Source of the DNA: Mobula birostris
Taxonomy: Eukaryota
Assembly (NCBI RefSeq): GCF_030028105.1
Contig: NC_092398.1
Coordinates: 28,800,424 to 28,864,423, forward strand
Length of the DNA: 64,000 bases
Reading direction: 5' to 3'
Within the stretch, counting starts at the first letter, position 1, and each line of letters opens with the position of its first letter. Positions 39,800 through 61,344 of the stretch are shown piece after piece. Both the position numbers and the translations under genes were made by a program. Below the pieces are notes generated by a model, which was not told the DNA's origin, did not search any database, and saw only the letters and a list, made by a program, of their open reading frames with translations.

Positions 39800-40200
39800 T
39801 GAGTCTCATTGACAATAAAGCGCCAAGTTGAAACAAAAGGCGTTCCCTCCCGCCTCGCCCCGCCTGTCTGTGGCAGCGGCCGCCCACTCAGTCGGGGAAA
39901 CTTCGACATCGATCGCCTCCCGTTACGGGACCTGCCGGCTGGCGATCGGTTTCGCGCGTAGCGGCTGTGTGACAAGGTCCTCAGCCTTCGGCGGAAGGGA
40001 TGTGGGGAATGATGCCGTCTCCGCGAACCGTGAGCCAGCTGCTCCTCCCGCTGTCTCAGGAGCCGCCGGCCGGCGTGAGGCGACGCCGCTCTCCCTCTCT
40101 GCTCGCCGCCTTCCTCCTCCTCCTCCTCCACAACGGCTCCATTGCCCTGGGTGAGGAGCGCAGCGCCCCAGGGATGGGAGGCGCCGGGGGAGGGGGCACC
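39800..40200 (+). promoter_or_regulatory. CpG island / probable promoter and first exon
   Basis: Abrupt CpG density (cgcgcg, ccggccggcg) and GC-box-like ccccgcc motifs, overlapping the leader exon. Confidence 0.7.
40000..40150 (+). CDS. MHC-like gene exon 1: leader peptide
   Basis: MWGMMPSPRTVSQLLLPLSQEPPAGVRRRRSPSLLAAFLLLLLHNGSIAL, with donor G|gtgag in phase 1. The start could be the ATG at 40000 or the MM a few codons downstream. Confidence 0.7.
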
Positions 40201-41090
40201 GATGGAGCGTAGGGAGGTAGAGGGGGGTGGGGACACTGAGGGAGGGTGGGCAAGAGAGGGAAGAGGGCAACTAGGGAGGGAGGGGAGGGTAAAGGTCAGG
40301 AGGGAAAGGGAGACCTCGCTGAAGGAAGGTGGAGAGAGGAGCGGCACCAGGGGAGGGTGGGGAGGGGAACTGAGGAAGGGTTAAGAGGGGAGAGGAGGGG
40401 AATGAGTACCGATAAAGGGTGGGGAGGAGAGTGGAGTGACATTGAGGCAGGGTGGGGAGTGAGCACCAAAGGAGGGTGGGAAGGGGGTGCAAAGGGAAGG
40501 TGGGGAGGAGGGGGCGCCAATGGAGGGTAGTGGACTGGGCACAATGGGAGGGAAGGGCGTTCCAAAGGAGAGGGGAGAGGGCATCGAATGGGCATGGAAA
40601 GGGAAGGAGGCACTGAGAGAGAATAGGTAGGGAGGGAGTGGAGGTGAATTGAGTATTGTTGAGGGGGTGGCGGAAGGGGCGGGGATATTGGGGATGAGTG
40701 TGTGGGAGAGGATATAGTGTGCCAAAGGTGTGTGGGGAGGGAGAGGGGTGCTAAGTGTGGGACGGAAGGCTGAGGAGTGGAGTTGTGGGGTTGCAGAGAG
40801 TGGGGAGGATAGAGGACACGGAGACTGGGAGGGGAGGGGGCCATGTTTGAGCGGGTGGGGAGGGACTGCCAAGGATGTTTGGGGAGGGAGGGAAGTAGTC
40901 ACTGAGGGTGGGTGGGGAGAGAGGGAGTGAGTGGAGTGTTGGGTGTGGACGGTGAGGAGAGATGTCTGTGGGGAGAGGTGTTGAGGGAAGGGCACTTCAA
41001 TGGCGAGGAGGGGTTTGGGCAAAGAGGTGGGTGGGGACGTGGGCATCGAACTGAGGAAGAGGTGGGTGCAGAGAGTGAGGGTGAAGGGTC
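40200..41090. repeat. G/A-rich low-complexity tract in intron 1
   Basis: Dense gggag/ggggg runs on the + strand. Confidence 0.8.
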
Positions 41091-41304
41091 AGCAGCACCA
41101 CCACCAAATCCCAACTATTGGAGTTTTACTGTGGGAGGGAGAGGTGGCTCTGGAGAAGTGGCACCTTTTTGCTGTCAGAATGGTGTGGAATCCACAGAAG
41201 GGAGAGACAAATTTGTTGTTTCAGGTTGATTAATTTTAAGGTTTTAAAATGAGCCATTTCACTCTCACAATTGGTTAATGGATCGATTATTATCTGCTTG
41301 CCAG

Positions 41305-41562
41305 GAATGCACATCGGTCAAGTGACTTTCTCTGGTAAAGGTTCACAGTTTTCAATGGCTACCCTGCAGTTTGCTTACAATGGAGAAACGACCGTTCGCT
41401 TTAATTATACTACAGGAAAGTTTGTGGCCATCAATCCAATTGTAAAGCCTTACATGGACGATCTGAACCGCTATACGGAGGTTATGAAATATGTTACCTG
41501 CTGTGTTGAAAGCATGCCTGTTGCCATGGAGATCGTTCACCAGGCTGTTCAAACTCTGACGG
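41305..41562 (+). CDS. MHC-like gene exon 2: membrane-distal groove domain (beta1/class I alpha2-like)
   Basis: ccag| acceptor and |gtaag donor, phase 1-1, 258 nt. (G)MHIGQVTFSG...LQFAYNGETTVRFNYTTGKFVAINPIVKPYMDDLNRYTEVMKYVTCCVESMPVAMEIVHQAVQTLT. Confidence 0.85.
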
Positions 41563-41579
41563 GTAAGTTTATTTTCACA

Positions 41580-42090
41580 AAAAAATCTGCAGATGCTGGA
41601 AATCCAAGCAGCACCCACAAAGTGCTGGAGGAGCTCAGCAGGCCAGGCAGCATCTATGGAAAAGAGTACAGACGACGTTTCGGGCTGAGACCCTTCATCA
41701 GGACTGGAGAAACAAGTTGAGGAGTCAGAGTTAGGAGGTGGAGAGGGGTGAAGTAAGGAGCTGGGAAGTTGATTGGGAAAAGAGGTGCAGGCTGGAGGAG
41801 GACGAATCTGATAGGAGAGGACAGAAGGGCATGGAAGAAAGAAAGGGGGGAAGCACCAGAGGGAGGTGATGTGCAGGTAAGGTGAGAGAGGGAAAAGGGA
41901 ATGGGGAATGATGAAGTGGGGGGGGGGCATTACTGGAAGTTCGGGAAGTCGGTGGTCATGCAATCAGGTTGGAGGCTACCCAGGCGGAATATAAGATGTT
42001 ACTCCTCCAACCTGAGTGCGGCCTCATCCTGACAGAAGAGGAGGCCATGGCATGGGAGTGGGAAGTGGAATTAAAGTTTTGTTTTCAAAG
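41580..42090 (-). mobile_element. Penelope-like 3' end and tail in intron 2
   Basis: Reverse-strand RLGSLQPDCMTTDFPNF followed by the pyrimidine tract and the standard tail. Confidence 0.8.
41669..41706 (-). ncRNA. Minimal type I hammerhead ribozyme motif (best-preserved copy)
   Basis: The minus strand reads CAGTC-CTGATGA-A-GGGTCTCAGCCC-GAAAC-GTC-GTCTG: intact core, GGG/CCC stem II, palindromic ACGT stem III, GUC cleavage triplet, and one mismatch in stem I. Confidence 0.7.
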
Positions 42091-42889
42091 CGATGTTCAA
42101 GCAGGCTGTGTGGCAGAGGCTGACAGAGAGGGCAAAACAAGGGAACACATGCACCAGTCCTCAAAGAGGGATCAGAAGTGGAGGGAGTGAGCAATTTCAA
42201 GTTATTAGGCGTCAATGTCTCTATGGATCTATCCTGGGGCCTACATGTCAAGGCAGTTACAAAAAGGCACGACAGCGGCTATATTTCATTACGCGTTTGA
42301 GGAGATTTGGTATGTCAAATTTCTACAGATTTACCGTGGAGAGGTATAACTGGCTGCACATGGGGGGAGGGGGTGTAGATACTGCAAAGGGTTGAAAGAA
42401 GCTGCAGAAATTTGTGAACTCAATTAGTTCCATCATGGGCACGAGCCTCCTTAGCATTCAGGAATCTTCAATGAGTGATGCCTCAAAAAGGCATCATCCA
42501 TCATTAAAGACCCTCACCACTCAGGACATGCCTTTCAGTGCTCCCTTCAGGGAGGAGGTCCAGGAGCCTGAAGGCACACACTAAAGGATTCAGGAAAAGC
42601 TTCTTCCCTTCTCCCATCAGATTTATAAACAGTCCACAAAAAACCCATGAACATAACCTCACTATTTTTGCTCTCTATTTGAACTATTTATTTCATTTAA
42701 ATACGTTTGTTTTTGTAATTTATTCCTTTTATGTATTACACCATATTGCTGGCACAAGACAGCAAACTTGTCAGCAAAAAGACCTTATACTCAGTGACCA
42801 CTTTATTAGGTTTTTCCTGTAGCTAATAAAGTGGAAACTGAGTGTATGTTCGTGGTCTTCTGTTGCTGTAGCCTACTGTTTTTCAACTG

Positions 42890-45190
42890 TTTTTAGCCCA
42901 ACACCTCCCTAAAGCACTTTCATCCTTGCTAATGCTCTTCTAAGGCACAACGCACTTTCTGGCACCCCCATGGTGTGAAAACATGTCTACCATATGCTAA
43001 CACGAGAAAACTGATTCTGATTTAAATTGTTATTGGTCTTTAAAACTAGCTTACTAAGTACCTACACACTGTACAGCAGCTTTGACATGAATGTGATCCT
43101 TAAGCTTGAAGGTTTTTAGCAAGAGTTGAAATATCTGGTTCAAGTTGTGACAGCAAAAGCCTTAAGTCCCCACGCATGCCAATATCCAAGCAGTTTCTGT
43201 TTTTTGTGAGCTTGTGGTTCACTGCACTTTCAATAAGGTAGGAGGATAGAAATACAATGAAGAGCAGTTTGGCTCATCTTCAAAGACCAGGAAACTTCAT
43301 ATGACCCTCTAGCCACATAGCACAAAAGTCGATGTTTTTAAATAAGCATTTTTGCTTCTCCCTTATTCTGAATTTTGATAATTTTTTCTTGCAAGCTCTC
43401 TTCCTGTTCTTCCACCTTGCAAAGGATTAGGGTTATTACCCAGTCCGGAATTTCTGGAGCGTTCAAATCCTTGAATCAATTCTGAAAATCTTTTTTTGGT
43501 GACTGCAGGTGTAAGGAGCACTCTTGCAAATCACCATCTGTGAAAGAGAGTGCCATACTTTCCATGCAGGGAAACTGAGAACATTCTTCTCCCAATGTTT
43601 TGCTTACATATTTTCAATTTTCTGATAAAGGTGGGCATTGCACTTTTTGTCTGGATTAAATTTAAGTTTTCACCCAGCAGTTTCATATTTAGAATATTCA
43701 GTTTGTCATACAGATTGGCTTGGTTTGCCACATCTCCATATAGAAGTCCAATCTCATTGACTTCCACCAGTGCAAAAAGATCGAAAAGTGTTTTAAGGAG
43801 CAGCTTTTGACAGCCGACACACTTCAGTGTGAAGAAACAAGCATTCAATCTCTGCATTGATATTTTGGCAGAAATGGTGAAATATTCTGCTATTTAATGG
43901 ATGATCTTTAATTTTGTTGATAGCAGCTATTACAGGAGTCATGCTTGAAAAAAGTCACTAGCTGAGGTTTATGGCTGCGAGGTGTTGACGATGAATTACA
44001 CAATGGATGTAAACAAACTTGGAATTTATTTTTTCATTAATGCCACTAAACTAGCATGGCAACCTGTTATATAAGGTGCTCCATCTGTTGTACAAGAAAT
44101 CATGTTCCTAATTGAAATACTTTCATCCTCAATATACATTTTGAGGTCGTCATAGATTGATTCTCTGTTGATATGTTTTTAACTTCTTACAAAAGAGAAT
44201 CGCTTCCTAAACTTTTCCCTTTTAGATAAACCGTACATATGCCATTAGCAATGCTGCGTTGCCTTGCACAGTTGACTCATCCAGTTATATCCCAAATTCT
44301 GTTTTTTGTGGCTCTGTGCAAAGTTGATATTCCACCTCTTCACTCATTTCATCAATACGATGAGCTATTGCTCAGAGGAAATTATTTTAAAATACTGGTT
44401 TCCATTTTGAGAACAGTTGTGAGCACTTCTGATACAGCAGGCATTATTAATCTTTCACCAATTGTATGAGATTTTCCACACCTTGCTATCATTTTGGAAA
44501 TGATATAAGAAGCAACGAGACCACAAACAAGGTCATTTCTTGGCAAATGACTCGAATGTGCAATGGTTTTGCAATGCTTCTTTCATCTTCTGGAACCGAG
44601 TAATAGCATAAGTAGCCTTTTCAGGGTGTCTTTTGCAGAAGCATTCCTGCAATCTTGATGGTTTCATGGATTCATTAGACAGTACAGCATTACAAATAGG
44701 AAACATGGGGTGTTGCTGATCTAATGGGATGGAATAAAACCATATTTCAGGTATGTAACTTTGTATTGACACACTTTGTGTAATTTCTGTTTCTTAGCAG
44801 GATTAGAAAGCAAGGCTTCAATGCCTTCAAGCTTGTAGAGATCGCACCGTACATACTTACCCATTGTTAACGGGGCTAAATTAAAATAATAAATTAACAC
44901 CACTGGGAATGCCTATCGGATGTTGATGGCAGTGAGTTGACACGGATGGAACGATGGCAGTGGTACGCAAAGGAACAGCGAGGCAAAGGTGAAGATGATC
45001 ACAACTGCAAAAATTACATTGACAAGGATTCAGATTGGAATCGAATGTTAGTCGGGACAGAGCTTGCGTTTGGGAAGCTACCTTCTTACTATTCCAGTCA
45101 ACACGATTGACCAGTCACGTAAAGTTTCGTAATCCCCAAAGATGGTTCTTGACCGCACATATGAAGCCGAGGTCACTTTGAACACCTCAA
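42890..45190 (-). mobile_element. Fossil hAT (Charlie/ZBED-like) transposon
   Basis: CNAVLSNESMKPSRLQE..KRHP (BED-like zinc region) and LYDKLNILNMKLLGENLNLIQTKS...FIRKLKICKQNIGRR. Many stops; boundaries approximate. Confidence 0.75.
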
Positions 45191-45659
45191 GAGGATTCCT
45201 CAGTGTTGACGGGTTCACTGATTGACTCTATTTCATCATTTGGTTCCGGCCAGCGCTGTATCGTTGCGCGACCTGTTTTCCATAGATCTGTCATGAAGGT
45301 GGAGAGGGTGTACTTGACCTATCAACCATTAAATTGCACGAACTCGTTCCGTGCTGCCAGTCAAGGGTAATTGTTGGACACCCTGTTTGCTAATTTACGC
45401 ATCCCCAATAATGTCTGTTTGGTTGGTAAGGTTGGATGAGATTGTCGAATTTCAGACTTGTTGCGATGACGGGTGCTCACCGCCTGCTGAGCTGTGGTTC
45501 TTCCTGTGTTCCAGTGCCTCATCCTTTTTTTCAGAAGTGCCTAGTCTACTAATGGTCGGTCAGGTCTCGAGCCTCAAGTAGGGGTGTCACTCTTCCCCCA
45601 TGACATCATACAATACCGCACTCCCCTTGGGAATCACTGCTGCAGCTCAGTCACTTTGA

Positions 45660-46111
45660 GGTGTGACATGTTGTACGTTCAGAGATGCTCTTCTGCACAC
45701 CACTGCTGTAACACATGGTGATTTGAGTTACTGTCCCCGTCCTGTCAGATTGAACCAGTCTGGCCATCCTCCTCTGACCTCTCTCATTAACAAGGTGCTT
45801 TCACCCACAAAACTGCCGCTCACTGGACGTTTTTTCTTTGTCGCACCGTTCTCTGTGAACTCGAGAGACCGTTGTGTATGAAAATCCCAGGAGATCAGCA
45901 GTTTCTGAGATACTCAGACCACCCCATCTGGTCCATGGTCAAAGTTAATTAGATTGCATTTCTTCCCCATTCTGATGTTTGGTCTGAACATCAACTGAAC
46001 CTCTTGACAACGTCTGCATGCTTTTATGCATTGAGTTGCTGGAACATGATTGGCTGATTAGAAGTTTATATTAACGAGCAAGTGTACATAATAAAGTTGA
46101 CACTGAGTGTA
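45660..46111. mobile_element. Tc1-like deleted transposon, 3' portion
   Basis: Ends with the TIR taaagttgacactgagtg|ta. Confidence 0.75.
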
Positions 46112-46629
46112 TGTCAGTGATATTAAACCTGATTCTGATCTGCACTAACCTGCAGCTAATTAACTGCACCCTGCAAATTTTCATTTCTAAGTATTTCCAC
46201 CTTATGGAAACTTTGAGTTACCAACAGTTCTTGAAACTTTCATGTGACCTGGGAGTGACTGAAAGAACCCTACCCCTGGTCAGAGGCAGATGACCAAGGG
46301 ACAGTTTCTAAACACAGAAGATTCGGCAGATGGTGGCAATCCAAAGCAACATGTGCGTATGCACGTGCATGCACACACACGCGTGCGCACGCGCGCACAC
46401 AATTCAGCAGGCCAGGCAGCATCTAGGGAGGTGAATAAACATAGGAACAGAATTAGACCATTTGACCCATTGTGTCTGTTCCTCCATTCCGTCATGCTGT
46501 ATTCTCAAGATTGTATAATATACACATGCTTTAATAGTAAACATACTTTGAACTTTGAAGTTCTGTTAGTCTTTACTTTTTTTGATCCCGTAACCAAGTT
46601 CAGCTTCAATGTGTTTCTGTCCACTGCAG

Positions 46630-46911
46630 CGAAGCCGACTATCACAATAACCTCAAGACACATGAAGAACAGAGAGAATACCTTGGCCCTGACATGCCAA
46701 GTGCATGGATTTTATCCCAAGAAAATCCACGCAACGTGGCTGCGGAATGGTGTGGCGATCGATCGGGAAGTGCCAATGACAAGAATTTTACCCAACTGGG
46801 ATAGGACGTTCCAAGTCCGGCTACAGGTCGAAATTGACCCCGAGAAGGGTGACACTTACACTTGTGAAATCGAGCATCTGAGCGTCCCTGACAAGCTGCA
46901 TGCAGTTTGGG
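46630..46911 (+). CDS. MHC-like gene exon 3: Ig C1 domain
   Basis: ctgcag| acceptor and |gtaag donor, phase 1-1, 282 nt. (A)KPTITITSRH...LTCQVHGFYPKKIHATWLRNG...ILPNWDRTFQVRLQVEIDPEKGDTYTCEIEHLSVPDKLHAVW. Confidence 0.92.
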
Positions 46912-46992
46912 GTAAGGCTCAGAGTCTGAATAATTTGGGGTGCAGTGTACTGGTGATGATCTGGTTCACACTCTGTCCAACACTATATTATA

Positions 46993-48300
46993 CACTCAGT
47001 GGCCACTTTATCAGGCACCTCCTCTACATAATAAAGTGACCATTGAGTGTAAGGTCGTGGTCTTATGCTGCTGTAGCTCATCCGCTTCAAGGTTGGAAAT
47101 GTTTGCGTTCAGTGACGCTCTTCCGCACACCAACATTGTATCAGGCGGTTCTTTCAGTTACTGTCGTGTTCCTGTTAGCGTGAACCAGTCTGGCCATTCT
47201 CCTCTGAAATCTCACTAACAAGGCACTTTTGCCCACAACTGCCACTCAGTAGATGATTTTTTTTGTTTGTTTTTCACACTGTTCACTTTAAACTCTCGAG
47301 ACTTGTACCTGAAAATCCCGCGAGCTCAACAATTTCTGAGATACTCAAACCACCCCATCGTGCATCAGCATCGTTCAAAGGTACATTTATTATCAATCTA
47401 TGTATTCAGTATTCAACTCTGAGATTCATCTTCTCCAGATAGCCAGGAAAAAAAGAAATCCATGGAAGTCATTCAAAGATAAACATCAAACCCCCACCCC
47501 TCCACTGCACAAAAAAAACAAAACTGAACAGGAACATCAACCCCCCAAACCCCCACCCTGCACAAAAAAATCAAAATGCTACAAGAACATCAACCCATCT
47601 AAACCCCACTCCCTCACGTAAAAAAAAACTAACAAAACATGCTCTGCAATAACAAGGTGAAAGAACAGGGGAAAACATAGAATATAAAAATCATAAGACT
47701 GGAAGTCCATAGTCCAATCCATAAATTCAGAACCTGGTAATGTCCTCTGACCAACAGCGAGAGAGAGAGAGAGAGAGAACACTCAAACACAGAGGCCTGC
47801 CCTCCAACAACAAAGAGTGAAAGGCACCACACAGCAGAGAAATCCATCCCTGCAATCAAAAGGCAAGCAGTTGCCTCAGATTCAATCTTCCTCGACACTT
47901 TACTCAGCAAAATGGAGTCGATCATTGGCCCCTGCCTTATCTTTAAGCTGCTTCGCCTTGAGGCTGTTTGAGCTTCCTGGAATCTTCCCGGAGACAGCAA
48001 AGCACTAGATCACTCAATTGATCTCTAAACTGTAAATCACAGGCTCTTAACAGTTCCAGAAACACATTTCAGATGAAAAGCAGACGTAAAAGAAGTGAAA
48101 TAAACAGATTCGTTGACTATCTGATAGACGTTGACCAGTGGGACGTTGTACACAGGCACCATCTTGTCTAGATTCCATGGTGAAAGTCACTCAGATCACA
48201 TTTCTTCCCCAATCTGATGTTTGGTCTGAACAACAACTGAACCCCTTGGCCATGTCTGCATGCTTTGATGCATTGAGTTGCTGCCACATGATTGGGTGAT
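46993..48300. mobile_element. Tc1-like copy interrupted by an unclassified repeat (~47375-48180)
   Basis: 5' TIR ta|cactcagtggccactttatcagg. The body resumes at ~48185. Confidence 0.7.
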
Positions 48301-49798: not shown

Positions 49799-52627
49799 CA
49801 TAGAACCATAGAAACTACAGCACAGAAACAGGCCTTTTGGCCCTTCTTGGCTGTGCCGAACCATTTTCTGCCTCGTCCCACTGACCTGCACACGGACCAT
49901 ATCCCCCCATACACCTCCCATCCATGTATCTGTCCAATTTATTCTTAAATGTTAAAAAAGAACCCGCATTTACCACCTCATCTGGCAGCTCATTCCATAC
50001 TCCCACCACTCTCTGTGTGAAGAAGCCCTCCCTAATGTTCCCTTTAAACTTTTCCCCCCTCACCCTTAACCAATGTCCTCTCGTTTTTTTCTCCCCTTGC
50101 CTCAGTGGAAAAAGCCTGCTTGCATTCACTCTATCTATACCCGTCATAATTTTATATACCTCTATCAAATCTCCCCTCATTCTTCTACGCTGCAGGGAAT
50201 AAAGTCCTAACCTATTCAACCTTTCTCTGTAACTGAGTTTCTTAAGTCCCGGCAACATCCTTGTAAAACCTTCTCTGCACTCTTTCAACCTTATTTATAT
50301 CCTTCCTGTAATTTGGTGACCAAAACTGAACACAATACTCCAGATTCGGCCTCACCAATGCCTTATACAACCTCATCATAACATTCCAGCTCTTATACTC
50401 AATACTTTGATTAATAAAGGCCAATGTACCAAAAGCTCTCTTTACGACCCTACCTACCTGTGACGCCACTTTTAGGGAATTTTGTATCTGTATTCCCAGA
50501 TCCCTCTGTTCCACTGCACTCCTCAGTGCCTTACCATTAACCCTGTATGTTCTACCTTGGTTTGTCCTTCCAACGTGCAATACCTTACATTTGTCTGCAT
50601 TAAACTCCATCTGCCATTTTTCAGCCCATTTTTCCAGCTGGTCCAAGTCCCTCTGCAGGCTCTGAAAACCTTCCTCGCTGTCTACTACACCTCCAATCTT
50701 TGTATCATCAGCAAATTTGCTGATCCAATTTACCACATTATCATCCAGATCATTGATATAGATGACAAATAACAATGGACCCAGCACTGATCCCTGTGGC
50801 ACACCACTAGTCACAGGCCTCCACTCAGAGAAGCAATTCTCTACTACCACTCTTTGGCTTCTTCCATTGAGCCAATGTCTGATCCAATTTACCATCTCTC
50901 CATGTATACCTAGCGACTGAATTTTCCTAACTAACCTCCCATGCGAGACCTTGTCAAAGGCCTTCCTGAAGTCCATGTAGACAATATCCACTGCCTTCCC
51001 TTCATCCACTTTCCTGGTAACCTCTCGAAAAACTCCAACAGATTGGTCAAGCATGACCTGCCACGCACAAAGCCATGTTGACTCTCATAGTAAGTCCCTG
51101 TCCATCCAAATGCTTGTAGATTCTGTCTCTTAGTACTCCCTCCAATAACATACCTACTACCGACGTTAAATTTACCGGCCTATAATTTCCCGGATTACTT
51201 TTCGATCCTTTTTTAAACAACGGAACAACATGAGCCCCTCTCCAATCCTCTGGCACCTCACCTGTAGACAGCGACATTTTAAATATTTCTGCCAGGGCCC
51301 CTGCAATTTCAACACTAGTCTCCTTCAAGGTCCGAGGGAACACCCTGTCAGGTCCCCGGGATTTATCCACTTTAATTTTCCTCAAGACAGCAAGGACTGC
51401 CTCCTTTTCGATCTGTACAGTTTCCATGATCTCACTACTTGTTTCCCCTAATTCCATAGACTTCATGCCAGTTTCCTTAGTAAATACAGACGCAAAAAAC
51501 CTATTTAAGATCTCCCCCATTTCCTTTGGTTCCGCACATAGGTGACCACTCTGACCTTCAAGAGGACCAATTTTATCCCTTACAATCCTTTTGCTCTTAA
51601 TATACCTGTAAAAGCTCTTTGGATTATCCTTCACTTTGACTGCCAATGCAACCTCATGTCTTCTTTTGGCACTCCTGATTTCTTTCTTAAGTATTTTCTT
51701 GCACTTCTTATACTCCTCAAGCACCTTATTTACTCCCTGCTTCCTATACTTGTCATACAACTCCCTCTTCTTCTTTATCAGAGTTGCAATATCCCTTGAG
51801 AACCAAAGTTCCTTATTCCTATTCACTTTGCCTTTAATCCTGACAGGAACATACAAATTCTGCACTCTCAAAATTTCTCCTTTGAAGGCTTCCCACCTAC
51901 CGATCACATCCTTGCCAGAGAACAACCTGTCCCAATCCACGCTTTTTAGATCCTTTCTCATTTCTTCAAATTTGGCCTTCTTCCAGTTAAGAACCTCAGC
52001 CCTAGGATCATATCTATCCTTGTCCATGATCAAGTTGAAACTAATGGTGTTATCATCACTGGAACCAAAGTGCTCCACTACACAGACTTCCGTCACTTGT
52101 CCTAACTCGTTTCCTAACAGGAGATCCAATATTGCATCCCCTCTAGTTGGTCCCTCTATATATTGATTTAGAAAACTTTCCTGAACACATTTTACAAACT
52201 CTAAACCATCTAGACTCCTAACAGTCCCAATCAATATATGGAAAATTAAAATCCCCTCCCACCACAACTTTATGTTTCCTGCAGTTGCTTGCTATTTCCC
52301 TGCAGATCTGCTCTTCCAATTCTCGTTGACTATTGGGTGGTCTGTAATACAATCCCACTAATGTGGCCATACCTTTCCTGTTTCTCAGCTCCACCCATAA
52401 GGACTCAGTAGACAAGCCCTCTAATCTGTCCTGCCTGAGCACTGCTGTAATATTTTCCCTAACAAGCAATGCAACTCCCCCACCTTTCATTCCTCTGCCT
52501 CGATCACATCTGAAACATCGGAACCCCGGAATATTAAGCTGCCAGTCCTGCCCCTCCTGTAGCCAAGTTTCACTAATTGCTATAACGTCATAATTCCACA
52601 TGTCAATCCACGCCCTCAACAGAGAAC
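49799..52627 (-). mobile_element. Young 5'-truncated CR1 LINE (ORF2 APE-RT)
   Basis: Long ORF pieces (VIAISETWL, PGNYRPVNLTSVVG, GVPQGSVLGP, KFADDTK), a (ttctatgg)n 3' tail, and a 7-bp TSD GCCGAAC (49792-49798 and 52628-52634). Confidence 0.92.
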
Positions 52628-52727
52628 GCCGAACTGTTCTCTGCTCTTGTATCTTCTGACCAACAGCTGTAGCCAAACTGCTCTCTGCCATAATACGTTC
52701 TGACCCCAGTTTTACTGATTTTCCTAG

Positions 52728-52829
52728 TTCCGAAGAATACCTATCCAGTCTATGGATATGTGATTGGAATAATCGCTGGAATAATTGGCATTCTGACTGC
52801 AGTGTCTGGAGGAATGATCAGGTGGAAAG
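52728..52829 (+). CDS. MHC-like gene exon 4: connecting peptide and transmembrane helix
   Basis: ttttcctag| acceptor and |gtagg donor, phase 1-1, 102 nt. (V)PKNTYPVYGYVIGIIAGIIGILTAVSGGMIRWK. Too short to appear in the supplied ORF track. Confidence 0.85.
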
Positions 52830-53774
52830 GTAGGAATATTTTTGTATGTAGTCATCAGTCCGGGGAACATTTTTTTCTTCATACCCTTCATTTTTAAAAA
52901 AGCCACAGATACCCAGTTGGCCAAATACCCAGTCTGGTCATCGGAGACCCAGTGATTCAGCATGGGTTATCACACCAAATTCTACACTAAGCGTGGTAGA
53001 ATATAAGGGCAGGCCAGAGAGCAAGAAAGAATTCAAGAGGGAAACAAACCACTGGTTTACACTGACCATCAAATATCCATTTAGATTTTTCCAACGTTGT
53101 TCTTCCAACATTCCCATTAGCCCAAATAAACTCCACCCACCCCCCCCCACACACACACCTACATGCTAGAGACATTCCCATCAGCTCCCAACACTCAACT
53201 AATCTAAAAGGAGAGGAGAGTGGATCTTGGGAGAAAGGGAAGGTGGAGGGACGCCATAGGGAGGCGCTGGGCAGTAAGGAGAAGTGAAGGGGTAATGGAT
53301 ATGCCGAATGGGGAATGGATAAAGATAAGATGGGAAGGGGAGAGAAATTACCAGAAGTTAGAGAAATCGATGCTACTCACTGTAATCTGCCAGCATGTAT
53401 TCCTTTCCCTCCTCACGCTTTACTCTTACTTCTGTCCCCTTCCAATCCAGTCTTGACGAAGATTCTTGACCTGAAACATTGACTGTTTATTCCCTTCCAT
53501 CTTTGCTGCCTCGCCTGCTAAGGTCCTCCTGCATTTTGTGTGTGTTGCTCTGGATTTTCCAGTATCTGCAGAACCCCTTGTGCTTATCAAATGTCCGATG
53601 GTGCAGATTCCAGGTGAGAGAGGAAAAGTGAACGGAGAGTTGTGAGGAGAACTGTTCTACACAGAGCGGTCAGCACCTGGGGTACCAGAGGAGGTGGTTG
53701 AACCAGATATGAAAGCAATGTTTAAGACCGTTTTGGCAGACGAGTGAACAGGCAAGAAGTGGAGCCATTATACC

Positions 53775-54265
53775 CTCAGTGGCCGCTTTATTAAGGGTGC
53801 ATGAGGAACATAATAAAGTTTATGTTCATGGTCTGTTACTACAGCCCATCAATTTCAAAGTTTGACATGTTGTGTGTTCAGAGATGCTCTTCTGCACACC
53901 ACGGTTATAACGTGTGGTTATTTGAGTTAGTGTCACCTTCCTGTCAGCTTGAACCAGTCTGGCTCTTCTCCTCTGACCCCACCCATTAACAAATTGTTTT
54001 CACCCTCAGAACTGCCCCACTGTTGTTCCTCGCACCATTGCCTGTAAACTCTAGAGACTGTTGTATGTGAAAATCCCTGGAGAGCAGCAGTTACTGTGAT
54101 AATCAAACCACCCCATCTGGCACCAACAATCATTCCACAGTCAAAGCCACTTAGATCGCCTTTCTTCCCCTCTCTGATGCTCGGTCTGAACAACAAATGT
54201 ACCTCTTGACTATGTCTGCATGCATTGAATTTCTGCCACATGATTGGCTGATTAGATGTTTCTAT
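53775..54265. mobile_element. Tc1-like deleted transposon
   Basis: The minus strand encodes a Tc1 transposase N-terminus remnant: GKKGDLSGFDCGMIVGAR...FSHTTVSRVYRQW. Confidence 0.8.
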
Positions 54266-54979
54266 TAATATCAAACCTGCTCCTGATCTGCACTAACCTG
54301 TAGCTAATTAACCTCACAATGTAACTTTTGATATTTCGGCCGTTGGTATTTCAATTTCACTGAAACTTTGGGTTACCAACTGCTTTTGGACCCCTCATAT
54401 GATTTGGGAGTGTCTGAAAGAACCGTTCCCCTGGTCAGTGGCGAATGACCAGAGGACAGTTTTGAAACACAGAAGATTCTGCAGTTGGTGGAAATCCAGA
54501 GCAACGCACACAGTCACATACACACAATGCTGCAAAAATTCGGTAGGTCAGGCAGCGTCTATGGAGGGGAATAAACAGTTGACATTTCGGGCCAAGACCA
54601 GTCATTAAGTCTAAAGGAGACATTTTGTGTAGTCAGCACCACTCAGGCCCCAAAGATGTGGATTAAAGAGTTTTAACCTTCAGAGATAGGATGTAAGACA
54701 TCGGAGTACAATTAGGCCACTCAGCCCATCAGATCTGCTCCACTGGATGTTATTTTTGTCCTTGCATCGCTCTCTGTAAACTCTAGGAACTGTTGTCCAT
54801 GAAAATCCCAGGAGATCAGCAGTTCATTCTCTATTCAAACCATCCTGTCTGGTCTGTGGTCAGAGTTACTTGGATCATATTTCTTCCCCATTCTGATGTT
54901 TGGACTGAACAACAACTGAACTTCTTGACCACGTTTGCATGCTTTTATGCTTTAAGTTGCCACATGATTAGCTGATTAA

Positions 54980-56827
54980 TAATCATAATACCTAAATATC
55001 TAAAGGAGTCTGAAACTTTAAAAGGAGTATAAAGGAAACAATTCACTTTTACTAAAATTAATATAAGGATCTTTATAAAGCTAATTTTGATCCCTTAGTA
55101 GACTCTATGAAGTATTTATTTAGTAGATGGAGTTGACTTACATTTTCACTTGTTGGTCGTATTCATATAGTTAAAATGATGATTCTACTGAGATTTTTAT
55201 ATTTATTTCAGAATATTCCTGTTTTTTTGACTAGGAAGTTTTTCGATCGGATTGATTCTATTATTTTATCTTTTATTTGGAATAATAAAAGACCAAGAAT
55301 TAGTAAATGTCATTTACAAAAATTGAAAAAGTATGGAGAGCTTGCTTTGCCTAATTTTAGAATGTATTATTGGGCTGTTAATCTCCGGTATATGTCTTTT
55401 TGGTTATATTGGGTTGATAAGAGTGATCGGTCAATTTGGGTAGACCTGGAACTAAAAGTTGTAAAACAGTTTTATTTAACCTCGTTATTGGGGGCTCCTT
55501 TACCTATGCAATTAGGTAAAGTTGTTAATTTAAACCTATATCCTGTGATTAAGTATTCTTTACAAATTTGGCGCCAGTTCCACAATTTTTTTAATCTTAA
55601 AAAATTTAAACTTTGTGGTTTAATTTACCAAAATTACTTTTTTAAGCCTTCTTTGAGTGATCCAATTTTTCTACTTTGGAAAATAAAGGTATTAATTCTT
55701 TTTTAGATTTATTTAAAGAAGATAGATTGACAATTAATTGATAAATATTCTCTTTCATACTCACACTTTCTGCAATACCTTCAAGTTAGACATTTTTTAC
55801 AAAAATATTTAAGTAATTTCCCTTACATATTGGAGGCTGACCTGTTAGATAATATTATGAGTATGAATCCTTTGATTAAGGGTTCTATTGGAAGAATTTA
55901 TAATTTACTATTACAATGGGATAAGCGTCCTTTGTCTGAGATCAAACAGGATTGGGAAAAGGAACTTAATTTGACTTTTATGACGGAGGATTGGATGCGG
56001 CTATTGAAGTCGGTTAACTTTTCTTCAATTTGTGCTAGCCATTCATTGATTCAATTTAAAATTGTACATCGTTATCATTTGACAAAGGAGAGACTTTGTA
56101 AAATCTTTTCTAATGTTGATAGTCATTGTGATAGATGTAAAACTGAGATAGCTACACTGACACATATCTTTTGGTCTTGTTCTATATTAGAACAGTTCTG
56201 GAAGTCGGTTTTCTCAACAATTACTAAAGCAATTAAAATTAATTTACAACCTAATAAATTAACTGTGCTTTTTAGAATAGATCCTCAAAATATTCATGGT
56301 ATTTCTGTGTCTGACCAACATGTTATTGCATTTGTTACATTGATAGCTAGGAGGGCCATTTTGTTGAAGTGGAAGGATACATCAGCTCCCACTTTGTCAC
56401 AATGGTTCTCTTAAGTGATGCTATGTCTTAGTTTGGAGAAAATTAGAAGTCGAACCTTTGAACCTTTATTTGATTTTGAGAAAAGATGGGGCTCATTTGC
56501 TCGTTATTATCATTTGAGTTAAGTGATATAATTTTTCCACGATCTAATTGTAATTTTTTTTAGTATATTTTCTTTTCTTGCTAACGGTTTGATGTTTATT
56601 TTAGAAGCTTTTTGTATGACGCGTGGCTCCAGGGTTGTACACTTAATGGGTTCTCTTTTTTTTCCTCACTTTTCTGCTCAGTAGGTTTTTTTTGTTATCA
56701 CAAAATTTTGTTTTCAATCTTTAAGATGATGGGTTTTTTTTCTGAGGCATTGTAAGTGTTGTTACTTCGATGTACTCATGTTATTTTTCCTATATATACA
56801 ATAAAAAGATTTGAAAGGAAAGAAAGA
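54980..56827 (+). mobile_element. 5'-truncated L1-clade LINE inserted in a Tc1-like copy
   Basis: RIHIVKMMIL.RFLYLFQ...LALPNF..YYWA and a C-terminal CDRC...THIFWSC knuckle, AATAAA and an A-rich tail. 16-bp TSD atgatt(a/g)gctgattaa (54964-54979 and 56828-56843). Confidence 0.9.
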
Positions 56828-57508
56828 ATGATTGGCTGATTAAATATTTGGATTAACAAGCAGGTGTACAGGTGTACCTAATAAAGTGACCAATGAGTGA
56901 AGACTAAAGGGAGATCGTGTAATTTGGTATCATGATTAGTACAAATGTGGGCGGAATGGCCTGTTTCTGAGCTGTACTTTTCTTTGTTTCTAAAACATAC
57001 CTTTATTCATTCAAATTATAGGCAGGAAATACGATATGATTGGTAGATGTCTCTTTCTAAATTGATTGTGTCATCAAATCAGTATCTTGATCGTGTCTTC
57101 CATGCTGTGCATACTATTTTCATGTGGCCTCTTCTGAGCAGTGTAACCACCAAAGTCAGAGTAAATTAGTAATTTTAATTACACCCTGTTAAAATTAAAG
57201 TTTAGTAAGGGCATCAAAGATCATGGGGAGAAGGCAGGAGAATGGGTTTGAGATGAATAATAAATCAGCTGCAATGAAATGGCCAGCACAGACTCAATAA
57301 GCCAAATGCCTTAATTCTGCTTCTATGCCTTGTGATTTAAATATAGCATCCAAGTACATATATGCCATCAAATATTGCCTTGAGATTCATCTTCTTCCGG
57401 GCATTTACAGGAAAATAATTACAATCAAATTTATGAAGACTATACATAATCAAAAACTGATCAACAACCAATGTGCAAAAGAAGACTAATTGTGCAAATA
57501 AAAACATA

Positions 57509-57875
57509 CAGAGGCATGCAAAAGTTTGGGCACCCCGGTCAAAATTTCTGTTACTGTGAATAGTTAAGTGAGTAGAAGATGAACTGATCTCCAAAAGTCA
57601 TAAAGTTAAAAATGAAACATTCTTTTCAACACTTTAAGCAAGATCAGTGTATTATTTTTGTTTTGTAGAATTTCAGAGTGGAGAAAAGGAAAGGAGCACC
57701 ATGCAAAAGTTTGGGCACCCCAAGAGATTTGAGCTCTCAGATAACTTTTGCCAAGGTCTCAGACCTTAATTAGCTTGTTAGGGCTATGGCTTGTTCACAA
57801 TCATCGTTAGGTAAGGCCAAGTGATACAAATTTCAAAGCTTTATAAATACCCTGACTCCTCAAACTTGTCCCAAA
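57509..57875. mobile_element. Left end of an IR/DR-type Tc1 transposon
   Basis: TA|CAGAGGCATGCAAAAG end, with the 22-bp direct repeat catgcaaaagtttgggcacccc at 57515-57536 and 57700-57721. Confidence 0.75.
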
Positions 57876-57879
57876 AAGT

Positions 57880-58765
57880 GTGAGAATGTTATGAGAAGTA
57901 TTGCTGGATGCGACTGTAGAGCAGGGCGGGAAACTATGTACTTAATATATCTAGCTATGATTCGATCAGTTATAGATTATGGTTGTATTGCATATGGTTC
58001 CCGCTGCTACGGCAGTGCTTGGAAAACTAGACAGTGTGCAGTCCAAAGCACTTAGACGCTGTTGTGGAGCCTTTAGAACAACATCAGTCCCGGCATTATG
58101 TGTGGAGATGGGAGAACTGCCTCTGCATTTAAGACAAATTCAGTTGGGCCTGAAGTATTGGGTAAAACTAAATGGATTCAATCACTGCTGTCCATCAAAG
58201 TGTCTTTTGCAGGGGAATTCAGAGCGCCAACGTAAAATTAAAAGATACCCATTTTTAGATTTGGTTACTAACTGGGCTGTGAAATTGAAACTGACTGAGG
58301 AAGACATAGCTGACCAAATTTTCTTGCCACCCGTCCCTTTTTGGCTCTATCCAGGACCAGAAGTAGACATAAATCTCCTTTTTCAGCTTCAAGGAAGCAG
58401 TGCAATTTGATCAGCGTTGATCACAAATGTATATTTAAATAATAAATGGGGATCTTATCTGAAGATTTTTACTGATGGCTCAGTGGACCCAGAGAGCAGT
58501 AGGGCAGATTTGGGATGTATGTGTCTCAACTTGGAGTTAAGATTGGTCACCGGGTTTCAGATGGTGTTTCTTGCTTTGCAACAGAATTATTAGCAATCCT
58601 CTGGGCCTTATGGTGTATAGAAGACTCTCGACCATGCAGGGTTATCATCTGTTCGGATTTTGCTGCTGCTTTATAGTCTATAAAAGGGAGTAAATCAAAA
58701 GCTCGATCTGATATAGTTATTGAGATTCTCTTAGTGCTGTTTAGAGTAGGGAAGATGGGTCGCAT
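57880..58765 (+). mobile_element. I/Nimb-clade LINE fragment with RNase H
   Basis: IRSVIDYGCI..., LDSVQSKALRRCCGAFRTT, then KIFTDGSV...TELLAILWAL...IICSD (RNase H). Confidence 0.75.
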
Positions 58766-59439
58766 TAGACATTACTGCCCTGGGAAAAAGTCCCTGGCTA
58801 TCCATTCAATCATTTCCTCTTATACACCTTTTCTCAAGTAGCCTCTCATCCTCCTTTGCTCTGACTTACTCAACCTATTCTCATAAGACATGCTCCCCAA
58901 TCTAGGCAGCATCCTGGTAAATCTGCTCTGCACTCTCTCTGAAGCTTCTTCATCGTTCCTATAATGAGGAGACCTGGGCTGAACAACCTGTTCCAAGTGT
59001 GGTATAATCAGGGTTTTGTAGAACTGCATCATTACCTGTCAGCTCTTGAACTCAATCCCTCGACTAATGAAGGCCAACATACCATATGCCTTCTTAACCA
59101 CAATTTCAACTTGCATAGCAACATTGAGGTGACTGGCAACATGGACCAAAGATCCCTCTGTCCTCCACACTGCTGAGAATATTGCCATTTAACCCTGCAC
59201 TCTGACTTCAAGCTCAACCTTCCAATGTGAATCATTTCAGTTTTCTGGGCCCAGCTCTGCATTCTGCCAATGTCCTGTTGTAACCTACAACAACCTACTG
59301 CGCTGTCGATAGCCATGTCATCAAGAGTAACAATTATTCCTGTCTGATATGGGGGAAATTGACATTAAGTCAGCATATTGGAGTCAGTGCAAATTCTTTG
59401 CTGTGCAATCACTTCACCGGTGTCAGTAATACCTTGTAT

Positions 59440-59705
59440 CTGGACAGCAGACACAAAATACTGGAGGAACTCAGCAGGACAGGCAGCGTCTATGGAAAAG
59501 AATCAACGTTTTGGGCTGAGACCCTTCAACAGGACCCCCCAGAACTCTACTCCTCATCTTTTTTTCTCCAGTCCTGCTGAAGGGTCTTGGCCCAAAACAT
59601 CAACTCTTTACTCTTTTCCATTGACACTGCCTGGCCTGCTGAGTTCCTTCAGCATTTTATATGTGTTGCCTGGACTTCCAGCATCTACAGATTTTCTCTT
59701 GTTTG
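59440..59705. repeat. Second inverted pair of Penelope-like tails
   Basis: Minus arm 59440-59535 and plus arm 59566-59705, each with a decayed hammerhead motif. Confidence 0.75.
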
Positions 59706-60691
59706 CCTTGTTTCTGGATGATTGATTGGATATCTGTCATATCTGACGATGAGTTTGAAACCAGTGCAGGAGAGTTTTTAAAGTGGAAAAACTGCTGCAC
59801 TGGGGCAGCTGCACTCTCTGAAATTTGAAGGTCCAGGACCAGTGGTATGAGTACTTGTCATAACTGACGTCTTCCTTCATTGCAGTAGACGACCATGACT
59901 TCTTCTGTACCTCTCAATGAAGTGTGGCTGTTGAATCTCACTGTTGACCTCATCCACTCATTCCGCATCTCTTCGCACGTTCGGATGGGCATGTTCCTAT
60001 CTCACTGTGGTATAAGGCCGCCGGCTACCCTCTCCTGGTTTAACCTGTCCATCGAAGCAATGTACTGGGGTGTGGCCGCTGTCACACCTATACAGCTACT
60101 TGGAGCTGCATGTGAAAGCTGAGTGTCAGGTGGGGACTAATGTGAGTGAGCTCCCCCAGAATGGACACGACAAGCTCCGTCACCAGCAGTGCTACCCCCC
60201 ACTGCACCCCGCCCCTGGACATCTCATACACCCATTTTATGTCTGGTAAACATCAAAAAAGTTAACTAGGGTGCACTATGCACACAGGAACCTGGGGTCA
60301 GGAGGACGTAACTATTAGACATAGGATCATAATTAGGCCATTCAGCCCATCATGTCTATTTCGCCATTCCATCATGGCTGATTTATCCTCCTTTCAACTT
60401 CATTCTTCTAACTTCTCCCCATAACCTTTGTCGCCCTTACTAATCAAGAAATCATCAAGTTCAGGAAGGAACGTCAACTTCCTTCCTTCCAAGCTCAACT
60501 TTAAATATACACAATGACTTCTCCTCCACAGCCACCTGTAGCAATGAATCCCACAGACTCACAACCTCCTGGCTAAAGAAATTCCTCCTCATCTCTGTTC
60601 TAAAGGGACATCCCTCCACTCGGATTCTGTGCCCTCTGGTCCCAGACTCCCCCACAATAGGAAACATCTTCTCCACATCCATTCTAACCAG

Positions 60692-60909
60692 AAGAAGAAA
60701 GAAGAAACCCCTTGACTCCGAGTGGAGTCATTGGGACTTAGTCATGATGGCGTTTTCTTAGCAGGCTTTCTCGTTTTTACGAGGCCGAGTTGCTAGCTCG
60801 ACGCTCAACCCAGCACGGATGGAAAGTGAGCAAGGGAGTCGGCTGGATTCGAACTCAGGAGCCTTCGCTCCGAAGTCCGGCGCTGATGCCACTACGCCAC
60901 CAGCTGGCG
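60692..60909 (-). mobile_element. Young tRNA-derived SINE (tRNA-Arg-like head)
   Basis: A box TGGCGTAGTGG, B box GAGTTCGAATCC, CTTCGGA loop, (TTC)n tail, and an 11-bp TSD attctaaccag (60681-60691 and 60910-60920). Confidence 0.85.
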
Positions 60910-61255
60910 ATTCTAACCAGGCCTTTCAATATTTAGTAGGTTTTGATGACATCCCACTCGCCATTGTTCTAAACTTCAGTGAGTATAGACCCAGAGCTGT
61001 CAACTGCTCATCATACTTTATCCCTTTCATTTCCAGGATCATTCTCGTGAACCTCCTCTGGAACCACTCCACTGTCAGTACATCCATTCTTAGCTTAGGT
61101 CCAAAACTGCTCGCGATGCTCCAAATGCAGATTGCCTAATCCATTATAAAGCAGCAGCATTATATCCTGAAATGTTACATACTGCTGTTGACTGGTGCTG
61201 TCTTAATTATTACACAGTCCATATCTTCATTATCCCTCTTCTCTTTTCTTCTCAG

Positions 61256-61344
61256 AACTCTGCTCACACGGTGAGGACGACCGTCTGTGTGAAGAACTTG
61301 GCCAGATGCCGAGGCCTGCCTCTGAATGCACGACAGAAGTTTGA
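61256..61344 (+). CDS. MHC-like gene exon 5 (putative): cytoplasmic tail and stop
   Basis: Long pyrimidine tract plus ctcag| acceptor in otherwise repeat-filled DNA. Phase 1 gives (E)LCSHGEDDRLCEELGQMPRPASECTTEV*. An unseen intervening micro-exon would change the frame. Confidence 0.6.

What the first reader, a model, noticed from the sequence alone, without database searches (positions are those of the whole stretch)
40000..61344. Intact 5-exon MHC chain with class II architecture and class I-type motifs (W-category or new lineage candidate)
Seen: five exons with GT-AG sites, all phase 1, join into an 882-nt ORF (293 aa) of leader, one groove domain, Ig-C1, TM and tail. The groove domain starts GMHIGQ, matching class I alpha2 GSHTLQ (H93, Q96), and has FAYNG, matching A117-Y-D-G120. 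The Ig domain has LPNWDRTFQ, with the class I alpha3-type Pro (P235) and without the Trp of class II beta NGDWTFQ. Established: W-category MHC molecules of cartilaginous fish combine class II-type chain organisation with class I interface motifs. Inference: this is a WB-like chain or an undescribed related lineage. The D122 and G239 equivalents are not conserved (T and R), so it is not a textbook WB.
Basis: partly seen in the sequence, partly recalled or inferred. Interest (0 to 1): 0.85.

Follow-up and report, generated by a model that had tools for sequence, protein, structure and literature searches.

The report
Manta ray W-category MHC beta gene
This is an intact, transcribed beta-chain gene of the "W-category" MHC family described in 2021 (WB_DS1-like subgroup) in a manta ray: a further member of a known family, not a new lineage.

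Summary
Five exons (40000-40150, 41305-41562, 46630-46911, 52728-52829, 61256-61344, + strand) have GT-AG introns, all phase 1, and give an 882-nt ORF of 293 aa. That protein is 100% identical to RefSeq XP_072102409.1 of Mobula birostris, which is named "class II ... beta chain-like". An 1843-nt RNA contig without mismatches joins exon 1 directly to exon 2. It leaves exactly 384 nt (282+102) between exon 2 and exon 5.

The gene is not a new lineage. Its beta1, beta2 and transmembrane parts match the WB_DS1 rows of Okamura et al. 2021. In a maximum-likelihood tree it sits inside an 18-sequence elasmobranch WB_DS1-like clade (99/96). That clade includes the great white shark and cloudy catshark WB_DS1L named in the paper. 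Class II beta/DMB is separated (99/97), and an AU test rejects joining them (p 0.0013).

The deviations T37, W59 and R61 and the Cys-Cys pair are confined to Mobula copies within this clade. A WA partner gene is not in the window.

The scan had already found W-category clusters in this genome, 63 kb and 130 kb upstream (s1-145066, s1-145137).

Verdict: new member of a known kind, of modest interest.

The parts
39075..39738 (+). C-rich 35-bp minisatellite (about 19 copies) directly upstream of the apparent transcript start
   Evidence: Tandem Repeats Finder. Its position relative to the transcript is inferred from the RNA contig offset.
39720..39999 (+). 5' UTR (inferred extent)
   Evidence: X1 contig record 231 lies at 39950, so record 1 would lie at about 39720 if colinear.
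40000..40150 (+). Exon 1: start codon and a 50-aa leader. It has a long N-region with RRRR, then a hydrophobic core. Phase-1 donor.
   Evidence: It is 98% identical to P0001 and 100% identical to P0022.
41305..41562 (+). Exon 2: beta1 (membrane-distal, groove-half) domain, 86 aa. It has an NYT glycosylation site and Cys116-Cys117 in the helix.
   Evidence: Pfam MHC_II_beta 26.2 bits; phmmer hits only WB_DS1-like proteins; the model gives 4 strands and a helix; the RNA contig covers it.
46630..46911 (+). Exon 3: beta2 Ig C1-set domain, with P57, W59 and R61 (LPNWDRTFQ)
   Evidence: Pfam C1-set E 3.3e-17. The best solved-structure sequence matches are class I alpha3/MR1, with class II beta a little lower.
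52728..52829 (+). Exon 4: connecting peptide and transmembrane helix with a glycine motif (YGYVIGIIAGIIGILTAVSGG)
   Evidence: It matches the WB_DS1 transmembrane rows of Dataset S3. Its length agrees with the 384-nt spacing in the RNA contig.
57668..57766 (+). Alternative last coding exon used by RefSeq isoform X1 (P0023, 297 aa), inside intron 4
   Evidence: tblastn gives 100% identity over P0023 residues 265-297. Not tested with RNA here.
61256..61344 (+). Exon 5, coding part: cytoplasmic tail ending ...ECTTEV and the stop codon
   Evidence: The RNA contig piece starts at 61254, where 2 letters fit either side of the junction.
61345..62025 (+). 3' UTR (681 nt, up to the end of the RNA contigs)
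   Evidence: The X1 1843-nt contig and X2 contigs end at 62025 with 0 mismatches.

Best explanation
The locus is an intact, expressed gene for a W-category MHC beta chain of the WB_DS1-like subgroup, most probably from the giant manta ray Mobula birostris. The product is a type I membrane glycoprotein. It has a cleavable leader, one membrane-distal beta1 domain (four strands and a long helix, half of an MHC platform), an Ig C1 beta2 domain, a glycine-rich transmembrane helix and a 29-aa tail. By analogy with the tiger salamander WA/WB pair tested by Okamura et al. 2021, it should need a WA alpha chain to fold, be glycosylated and reach the cell surface as a class II-shaped heterodimer. In that heterodimer the interdomain contacts resemble class I, with the WA alpha2 domain playing the part of beta2-microglobulin. 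It is a nonclassical molecule whose ligand is unknown. Shown here: the gene structure, its transcription and splicing, its homology and tree position, and a class II beta-like fold in a predicted model. Inferred: pairing with WA, surface expression and any ligand binding.
For: The exon model is canonical, and its protein is 100% identical to RefSeq P0022. A spliced RNA contig without mismatches supports it. A phmmer search with the beta1 exon against 1.84 billion representative proteins found, as plausible homologues, only batoid paralogues and the shark proteins P0015/P0016. The other four hits (649-1812 aa) matched only through several short stretches. P0015 and P0016's cluster-mate P0020 are Carcharodon proteins. 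Their beta1 and beta2 strings equal the 'great white shark WB DS1L' rows of the paper's datasets. In the tree the gene lies in an 18-row WB_DS1-like clade (99/96*), class II beta/DMB is split off (99/97*), and the AU test rejects joining them (p 0.0013). The beta1-only tree keeps the WB_DS1-like clade (94/92), and the beta2-only tree keeps class II beta/DMB as a separate starred clade. The diagnostic residues Q6, A32, G35 and P57 are present and there is no W61. In the AlphaFold model the ectodomain blocks mostly have pLDDT 80-92, and the best Foldseek matches are HLA-DR beta chains (TM by target about 0.8 over 182 columns).
Against: No WA gene lies in the window, so pairing is untested. Position 37 is T rather than D, and position 61 is R rather than G. 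The beta1 domain lacks the canonical disulfide and carries two adjacent cysteines instead. These changes could alter or abolish normal interdomain packing. The tissue and level of expression are unknown. The exon 3-4 and 4-5 joints were confirmed only by length arithmetic and by the RefSeq model.
Confidence: 0.88

Rival explanations
1. It is a divergent nonclassical class II beta chain (DM/DO-like or a ray-specific class II lineage) and not W-category, as the RefSeq name 'class II histocompatibility antigen beta chain-like' suggests.
For: Pfam MHC_II_beta scores above its cut-off (26.2 against 20.9 bits). The best Foldseek matches are class II beta chains. The chain has the class II exon and domain organisation.
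Against: W-category chains have the class II organisation by definition, so these points do not discriminate. The gene lacks the W61 that is invariant in class II beta and has the class I/W-type P57. The tree separates class II beta/DMB with 99/97*, and the AU test rejects the union (p 0.0013). The nearest non-batoid relatives are the sequences published as WB_DS1L.
Confidence: 0.04
2. It is an undescribed MHC lineage related to WB but separate from it.
For: Positions 37 and 61 deviate, there is a W at position 59, the helix carries a vicinal Cys-Cys, and the leader is unusually long.
Against: All these features are limited to Mobula copies or to batoids within the WB_DS1-like clade. The stingray orthologues P0008/P0010 have D37 and G61. 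The gene nests within, not beside, the clade that holds the named shark WB_DS1L sequences (99/96*). The partial little skate WB_DS1-like rows in the paper also match.
Confidence: 0.03
3. The gene is transcribed but no longer functional: a recent duplicate drifting after loss of its partner WA, with its interface residues decaying.
For: There is a near-identical paralogue, P0001 (97.6%), on the same chromosome. A pseudo beta1 exon lies 12 kb upstream. The interface positions T37 and R61 are substituted. An earlier unverified note reports a frameshift in the neighbouring WA.
Against: The ORF is intact and has canonical splice sites. The contig depth of about 26 is similar in two RNA runs. The Ig, TM and leader parts are strongly conserved between Mobula and stingrays (80-86%), while beta1 diverges (59%), which is the pattern of a constrained MHC gene.
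Confidence: 0.05

Closest known systems
W-category beta chain, WB_DS1 subgroup (banded houndshark WB_DS1; great white shark, cloudy catshark and little skate WB_DS1-like; Okamura et al. 2021, PNAS, PMC8713811)
   Same: It has the same five-part class II-type chain and phase-1 exon layout. The beta1 pattern G-x-H-x-x-Q ... L-(R/Q)-F-A-Y-(D/N)-G ... F-N-Y-T-T is shared, as is the beta2 pattern AKP-x-I-T-I-T ... C-x-V-x-GFYP ... TWL-x-NG ... LPN-x-D-x-TFQ. The transmembrane pattern YGYV-x-GI-x-x-G-x-x-GI ... GG is shared. Most of the subgroup also lacks the beta1 disulfide. The gene lies in a starred clade with the named shark sequences.
   Different: It shares 36-37% identity with the shark proteins over its whole length (41% in aligned regions). 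T replaces D/E at position 37, R replaces G at 61, and there is a W at 59. A Cys-Cys pair lies in the beta1 helix. The leader is 50 aa with an RRRR stretch that is conserved among myliobatiform rays but absent in sharks. The tail is short and ends in T-E-V, and it lacks the long cytoplasmic exon of sharks. Several recent paralogues exist.
Classical and nonclassical MHC class II beta chains (DR/DQ/DP, B-L beta, DM beta, DO beta)
   Same: The overall chain organisation and predicted fold are the same (Foldseek TM by target about 0.8). Pfam MHC_II_beta scores above its cut-off. The transmembrane segment is rich in glycine.
   Different: It has no W61 and no C15-C79 disulfide, but it has P57. It is separated from these chains in the tree, and the AU test rejects a union.
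MHC class I heavy chain alpha2-alpha3 (for example MR1, H-2K)
   Same: The Ig domain scores best against class I alpha3 among solved structures (MR1 73 bits). H3/Q6, A-Y-x-G and P57 are class I-type motifs.
   Different: There is no alpha1 exon, because RNA joins the leader directly to the single groove-half exon. The transmembrane segment and the chain organisation are of the class II beta type.

Membership tests
W-category MHC, WB chain (Okamura et al. 2021) | Class II-type beta-chain organisation: leader, one membrane-distal domain, one Ig C1 domain, then CP/TM/CY, each on its own exons | tested here: met
   The five-exon model; RNA joins the leader directly to the beta1 exon, and the spacing fits exon 3 + exon 4; secondary structure of the model; Foldseek matches to class II beta chains.
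W-category MHC, WB chain (Okamura et al. 2021) | beta1 carries the class I alpha2-type residues A32 and G35 (with the shared Q6), and D37 | tested here: inconclusive
   Q6, A32 and G35 are present (GMHIGQ, FAYNG). Position 37 is T, not D. D37 is not invariant among published WB_DS1: it is E in houndshark and D in the stingray orthologues P0008/P0010.
W-category MHC, WB chain (Okamura et al. 2021) | beta2 has P57 and lacks the class II W61 (the paper says it is 'mostly' G61) | tested here: met
   In LPNWDRTFQ, P57 is present and position 61 is R, neither W nor G. G61 is kept in most batoid paralogues, and R61 is also found in the catshark WB_DS3-like protein P0033.
W-category MHC, WB chain (Okamura et al. 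2021) | Groups in a tree with named WB sequences and apart from class II beta | tested here: met
   WB_DS1-like clade of 18 rows, 99/96*, including great white shark and cloudy catshark WB_DS1L. Class II beta/DMB is split off at 99/97*. AU p 0.0013 against a union. Domain trees agree. Caveat: the sample holds no elasmobranch classical class II beta and only one class I sequence.
W-category MHC, WB chain (Okamura et al. 2021) | beta-chain-type transmembrane glycine motif | tested here: met
   YGYVIGIIAGIIGILTAVSGG aligns with the WB_DS1 rows of Dataset S3. A GxxxG in W-category beta chains is noted in PMC13399432.
W-category MHC, WB chain (Okamura et al. 2021) | Lies next to a WA gene as a pair | not testable with these tools
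   No second Ig C1 exon and no WA-like exon was found in the 64-kb window by motif scan or tblastn. Earlier unverified notes place a WA 5.7-7.6 kb beyond the window's end.
W-category MHC, WB chain (Okamura et al. 2021) | Forms a heterodimer with WA and reaches the cell surface only with it | not testable with these tools
   This needs co-expression experiments. It has been shown only for tiger salamander WA/WB, in the paper.
MHC class II beta (classical, DM, DO) | Invariant W61 in beta2 and the beta1 disulfide (C15-C79) | tested here: not met
   Position 61 is R. There is no Cys at the strand position, and the only beta1 cysteines are the adjacent C116-C117.
MHC class I heavy chain | Two membrane-distal domains (alpha1 and alpha2) on one chain | tested here: not met
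   The RNA contig splices the leader exon directly to the single groove-half exon. 384 nt then follow before the tail exon, which equals the Ig exon plus the TM exon.

The most novel reading that the evidence does not exclude
Within the WB_DS1 clade, the Mobula sublineage (this gene, P0001, P0003) has rebuilt the contact between platform and Ig domain (G61R, and W59 in M. birostris, T37). It has also gained an adjacent Cys-Cys pair on the beta1 helix in a domain that has no other cysteine. This might mark a functional shift, for example a redox-sensitive or covalent link to a ligand or to the WA chain. Together with a leader that is better conserved than the mature protein and a PDZ-ligand-like T-E-V C-terminus, it might also point to changed trafficking.
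Probability: 0.1. Interest if true: 0.5.

Novelty: new member of a known kind. Interest (0 to 1): 0.25.

Why it matters
The W-category is the proposed evolutionary intermediate between MHC class II and class I. The 2021 paper had only partial beta-chain sequence from one batoid, the little skate. This locus gives a complete, RNA-supported WB_DS1-like gene from a manta ray. It shows that RefSeq files such genes under 'class II beta chain-like'. It also shows that rays carry several WB_DS1 sublineages, with beta1 evolving fastest. That is useful for annotation and for choosing WA/WB pairs for expression or structural work, but it does not change the picture of the family.

Tried and rejected
1. 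I looked for a hidden alpha1-type exon, which would mean a class I build. This is rejected: the RNA contig joins the leader to the groove exon directly.

2. I looked for a WA partner or a second Ig C1 exon in the window, using a six-frame motif scan and tblastn with WB-like proteins. None was found. I had no WA protein to use as a query.

3. The look-up of encoding contigs for P0022, to read the genomic neighbourhood beyond the window, found nothing on record.

4. A search of the paper's supplements for the exact manta motifs gave no occurrence, so this sequence is not in the paper.

5. A phmmer search of the beta1 exon against solved structures was topped by designed beta-propeller proteins ('Cake'). 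These are repeat artefacts of a 25-residue stretch. The real class II beta hits were weak (E about 0.2).

6. A literature search for Mobula and MHC found nothing relevant.

7. Direct laying of the exon 2-3, 3-4 and 4-5 joints was not possible within two calls of 6 kb each. I used contig arithmetic instead.

8. Elasmobranch classical class I and class II beta sequences could not be retrieved. Bird class II beta, DM beta, an unnamed class II beta-like pair from Logan assemblies (it has the class II GDWTYQ motif) and one coelacanth class I protein served as outgroups.
Full report
**What is there**

Extending from them and searching for the flanking exons gives a five-exon model: 40000-40150, 41305-41562, 46630-46911, 52728-52829 and 61256-61344. 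Every intron is GT-AG and every junction is phase 1. The joined ORF is 882 nt / 293 aa.

Pfam calls exon 3 an Ig C1-set domain (E 3.3e-17). It calls exon 2 MHC_II_beta above its curated cut-off (26.2 against 20.9 bits), with a weak MHC_I alpha2 echo of 12.6 bits. Among solved structures the Ig exon scores best against class I alpha3 (MR1 about 73 bits, H-2K about 70). Class II beta follows a little lower, at 60-64 bits.

**Is it a real, spliced gene?**

A word-indexed search with the Ig exon found annotated ray proteins. One member of the best cluster is P0022 = XP_072102409.1, [quoted passage not shown] of Mobula birostris. It is 100% identical to the joined ORF. A paralogue on the same chromosome, P0001, is 97.6% identical.

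Public RNA runs hold the exons. In run X1 a contig of 1843 nt with no mismatches shows the following:
- It covers 39950-40098 (record 231-379) and 41304-41562 (record 431-689), so intron 1 is spliced out.
- The same contig covers 61254-62025 (record 1072-1843).
- One or two letters fit on either side of each junction. Allowing for them, exactly 384 nt lie between the end of exon 2 and the start of exon 5, which is exon 3 (282) plus exon 4 (102).
- Intron 1 has zero depth.

Runs X2 and X3 hold concordant shorter contigs. No extra membrane-distal exon exists in the transcript, so a class I build is excluded. The exon 2-3, 3-4 and 4-5 joints rest on this arithmetic and on the identical RefSeq model, not on a directly laid joint.

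**What family is it?**

Okamura et al. 2021 (PMC8713811) define the W-category by four properties:
- alpha and beta chains organised as in class II;
- class I-type interface residues (in WB: A32, G35 and D37 in beta1; P57 and mostly G61, never W61, in beta2);
- beta-chain-type transmembrane glycines;
- WA/WB gene pairs.

Elasmobranchs have three WB subgroups: WB_DS1, WB_DS3 and WB_Nds5L. The paper's alignment rows for WB_DS1 cover houndshark, dogfish, bullhead shark and a partial little skate sequence. They match the manta sequence closely in beta1, beta2 and the transmembrane segment.

A phmmer search with the beta1 exon against 1.84 billion representative proteins returned only eight hits. 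Two are batoid paralogues and two are the shark proteins P0015 and P0016. The other four are long proteins of 649-1812 aa that matched only through several short stretches, which I take to be repeat artefacts. No class I or class II protein was returned. P0015 and P0020 (a cluster-mate of P0016) are Carcharodon carcharias proteins. Their beta1 and beta2 strings equal the "great white shark WB DS1L" rows of the paper. P0024 equals the "cloudy catshark WB DS1L" row.

A profile search added WB_DS1-like proteins of Heptranchias, Heterodontus, Mustelus, Stegostoma, Scyliorhinus and Pristis. It also added:
- a catshark WB_DS3-like protein (P0033);
- a sawfish WB_Nds5L-like protein (P0050);
- cyprinid proteins named "zinc-alpha-2-glycoprotein" that match the teleost WB rows;
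- bird class II beta, DM beta, and a coelacanth class I protein.

**Trees**

A maximum-likelihood tree of 32 ectodomain-plus-TM sequences places the window's gene in a starred clade (99/96) of 18 elasmobranch WB_DS1-like sequences. Class II beta and DM beta lie on the other side of a 99/97 branch. Forcing the batoid clade together with class II beta/DMB costs 25 log-likelihood units, and the AU test rejects it (p 0.0013).

Separate domain trees agree. In the beta1 tree the WB_DS1-like clade is kept at 94/92. The beta2 tree is poorly resolved inside the group, but class II beta/DMB form their own starred clade without the manta gene. Equally, the gene is not a new lineage.

Caveat: I could not retrieve elasmobranch classical class I or class II beta sequences, so the outgroups are from birds, mammals, a lizard, a coelacanth and an unnamed Logan assembly.

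**Structure**

An AlphaFold2 model built on a 28-sequence alignment has mean pLDDT 72, and most ectodomain blocks score 80-92. It shows four strands and a long kinked helix for beta1, a seven-strand Ig domain and a transmembrane helix. Foldseek's best matches are HLA-DR, DQ, DP, DO and chicken B-L beta chains, with TM-score by target of about 0.8 over 182 columns at 22-26% identity. This fits a W-category beta chain, which is class II-shaped by definition.

**The deviations**

- Position 37 is T. It is E in houndshark WB_DS1, D in the stingray orthologues and V in another Mobula paralogue.
- Position 61 is R in this gene, P0001 and P0003, and in the fragment P0002. It is G in the other full-length batoid paralogues and in all the shark WB_DS1-like proteins. 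It is R again in the catshark WB_DS3-like protein.
- W59 occurs only in the two M. birostris copies.
- The adjacent Cys116-Cys117 occur only in this gene, P0001 and P0003.
- The canonical beta1 disulfide is absent from nearly the whole WB_DS1 group.

These are recent, lineage-specific substitutions inside the family. Their effect is unknown.

Between Mobula and dasyatid stingrays the beta1 domain is the least conserved part apart from the tail (59% identity). The beta2 domain is 80% identical, CP/TM 82-85% and the leader 86%. Fast change in the membrane-distal domain is the usual MHC pattern and argues for a constrained, working gene.

**How it most likely works**

By analogy with the salamander WA/WB experiments in the paper, the chain should pair with a WA alpha chain. 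Its beta1 would form half of the platform. Its beta2 would pack against the beta2-microglobulin-like WA alpha2. The glycine-rich TM helices would pack together, and the dimer would travel to the cell surface. The ligand is unknown, and W-category molecules lack the classical peptide-anchoring residue sets. All of this is inference.

The window holds no WA gene. Earlier unverified notes of this scan place one 5.7-7.6 kb beyond the window's end with a possible frameshift. They also report W-category clusters 63 kb and 130 kb upstream in the same genome.

**Verdict**

The "WB-like" reading is supported and can be sharpened to WB_DS1-like. The "new lineage" option is rejected. The gene is already in RefSeq under a class II name, and the family was published in 2021. 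What is new is a complete ray member and some lineage-specific substitutions.

Noticed in passing
window 27516-27680 (+): An orphan pseudo beta1 exon with an in-frame stop. It is 60% identical (E 3e-16) to the beta1 of the sawfish WB_DS1-like protein P0029 and much less like the intact gene 12 kb downstream. It looks like a relic of a third batoid WB_DS1 sublineage. No matching Ig exon was found nearby.
   Followed up: partly
window 57668-57766 (+): An alternative last coding exon inside intron 4, 100% identical to the C-terminus of RefSeq isoform X1 (P0023, 297 aa). It replaces the conserved ...ECTTEV tail. It lies next to a stretch with very high RNA-contig depth, probably repeats (about 57150-57950).
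   Followed up: partly
window 40000-40150 (+): The 50-aa leader has a 31-residue N-region with RRRR before the hydrophobic core. It is 86% identical between Mobula and dasyatid stingrays, which is better conserved than any mature domain, and it is absent from the shark WB_DS1-like proteins that have an ordinary N-terminus (P0016, P0020, P0024-P0027).
   Followed up: partly
window 61330-61344 (+): The C-terminus is T-E-V, and T-E-A or S-E-A in the paralogues and orthologues. This resembles a type I PDZ-binding motif. It is conserved in batoids and absent in sharks. Run X4 shows T>C at 61340, which would change V293 to A as in paralogue P0001.
   Followed up: no
window 39075-39738: A C-rich 35-bp minisatellite (about 19 copies, 75-83% matches) ends about where the RNA contig begins. 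A G-rich repeat (40186-40284) follows in intron 1, which gives the sharp GC-skew flip around 40000.
   Followed up: no
window 49815-52691 (-): A non-LTR retrotransposon on the minus strand in intron 3, with open reading frames holding an endonuclease domain (Exo_endo_phos) and a reverse transcriptase domain (RVT_1). Its 5' end lies only about 37 bp from the acceptor of exon 4. Another endonuclease fragment is at 7951-8538 (-), and a zf-RVT fragment is at 55830-56414 (+).
   Followed up: partly
window 1162-1785 (-): An open frame with a rhodopsin-family 7tm_1 match (E 3.5e-8, profile positions 115-256), that is, part of a GPCR gene or pseudogene at the start of the window.
   Followed up: no
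proteins P0093, P0094 (Garra rufa, Labeo rohita): Cyprinid proteins annotated 'zinc-alpha-2-glycoprotein' match the teleost WB rows of Okamura et al. and have a single groove-half domain plus an Ig domain. Automatic annotation therefore misnames W-category beta chains in teleosts as well.
   Followed up: partly
window 52830-52870 (+): Read-through past the exon 4 donor encodes ...GRNIFVCSHQSGE. tblastn aligned this with the tail residues that follow the TM-end W-K-E in P0001 and P0009. It may be a vestige of tail coding sequence that was once contiguous with the TM exon.
   Followed up: no
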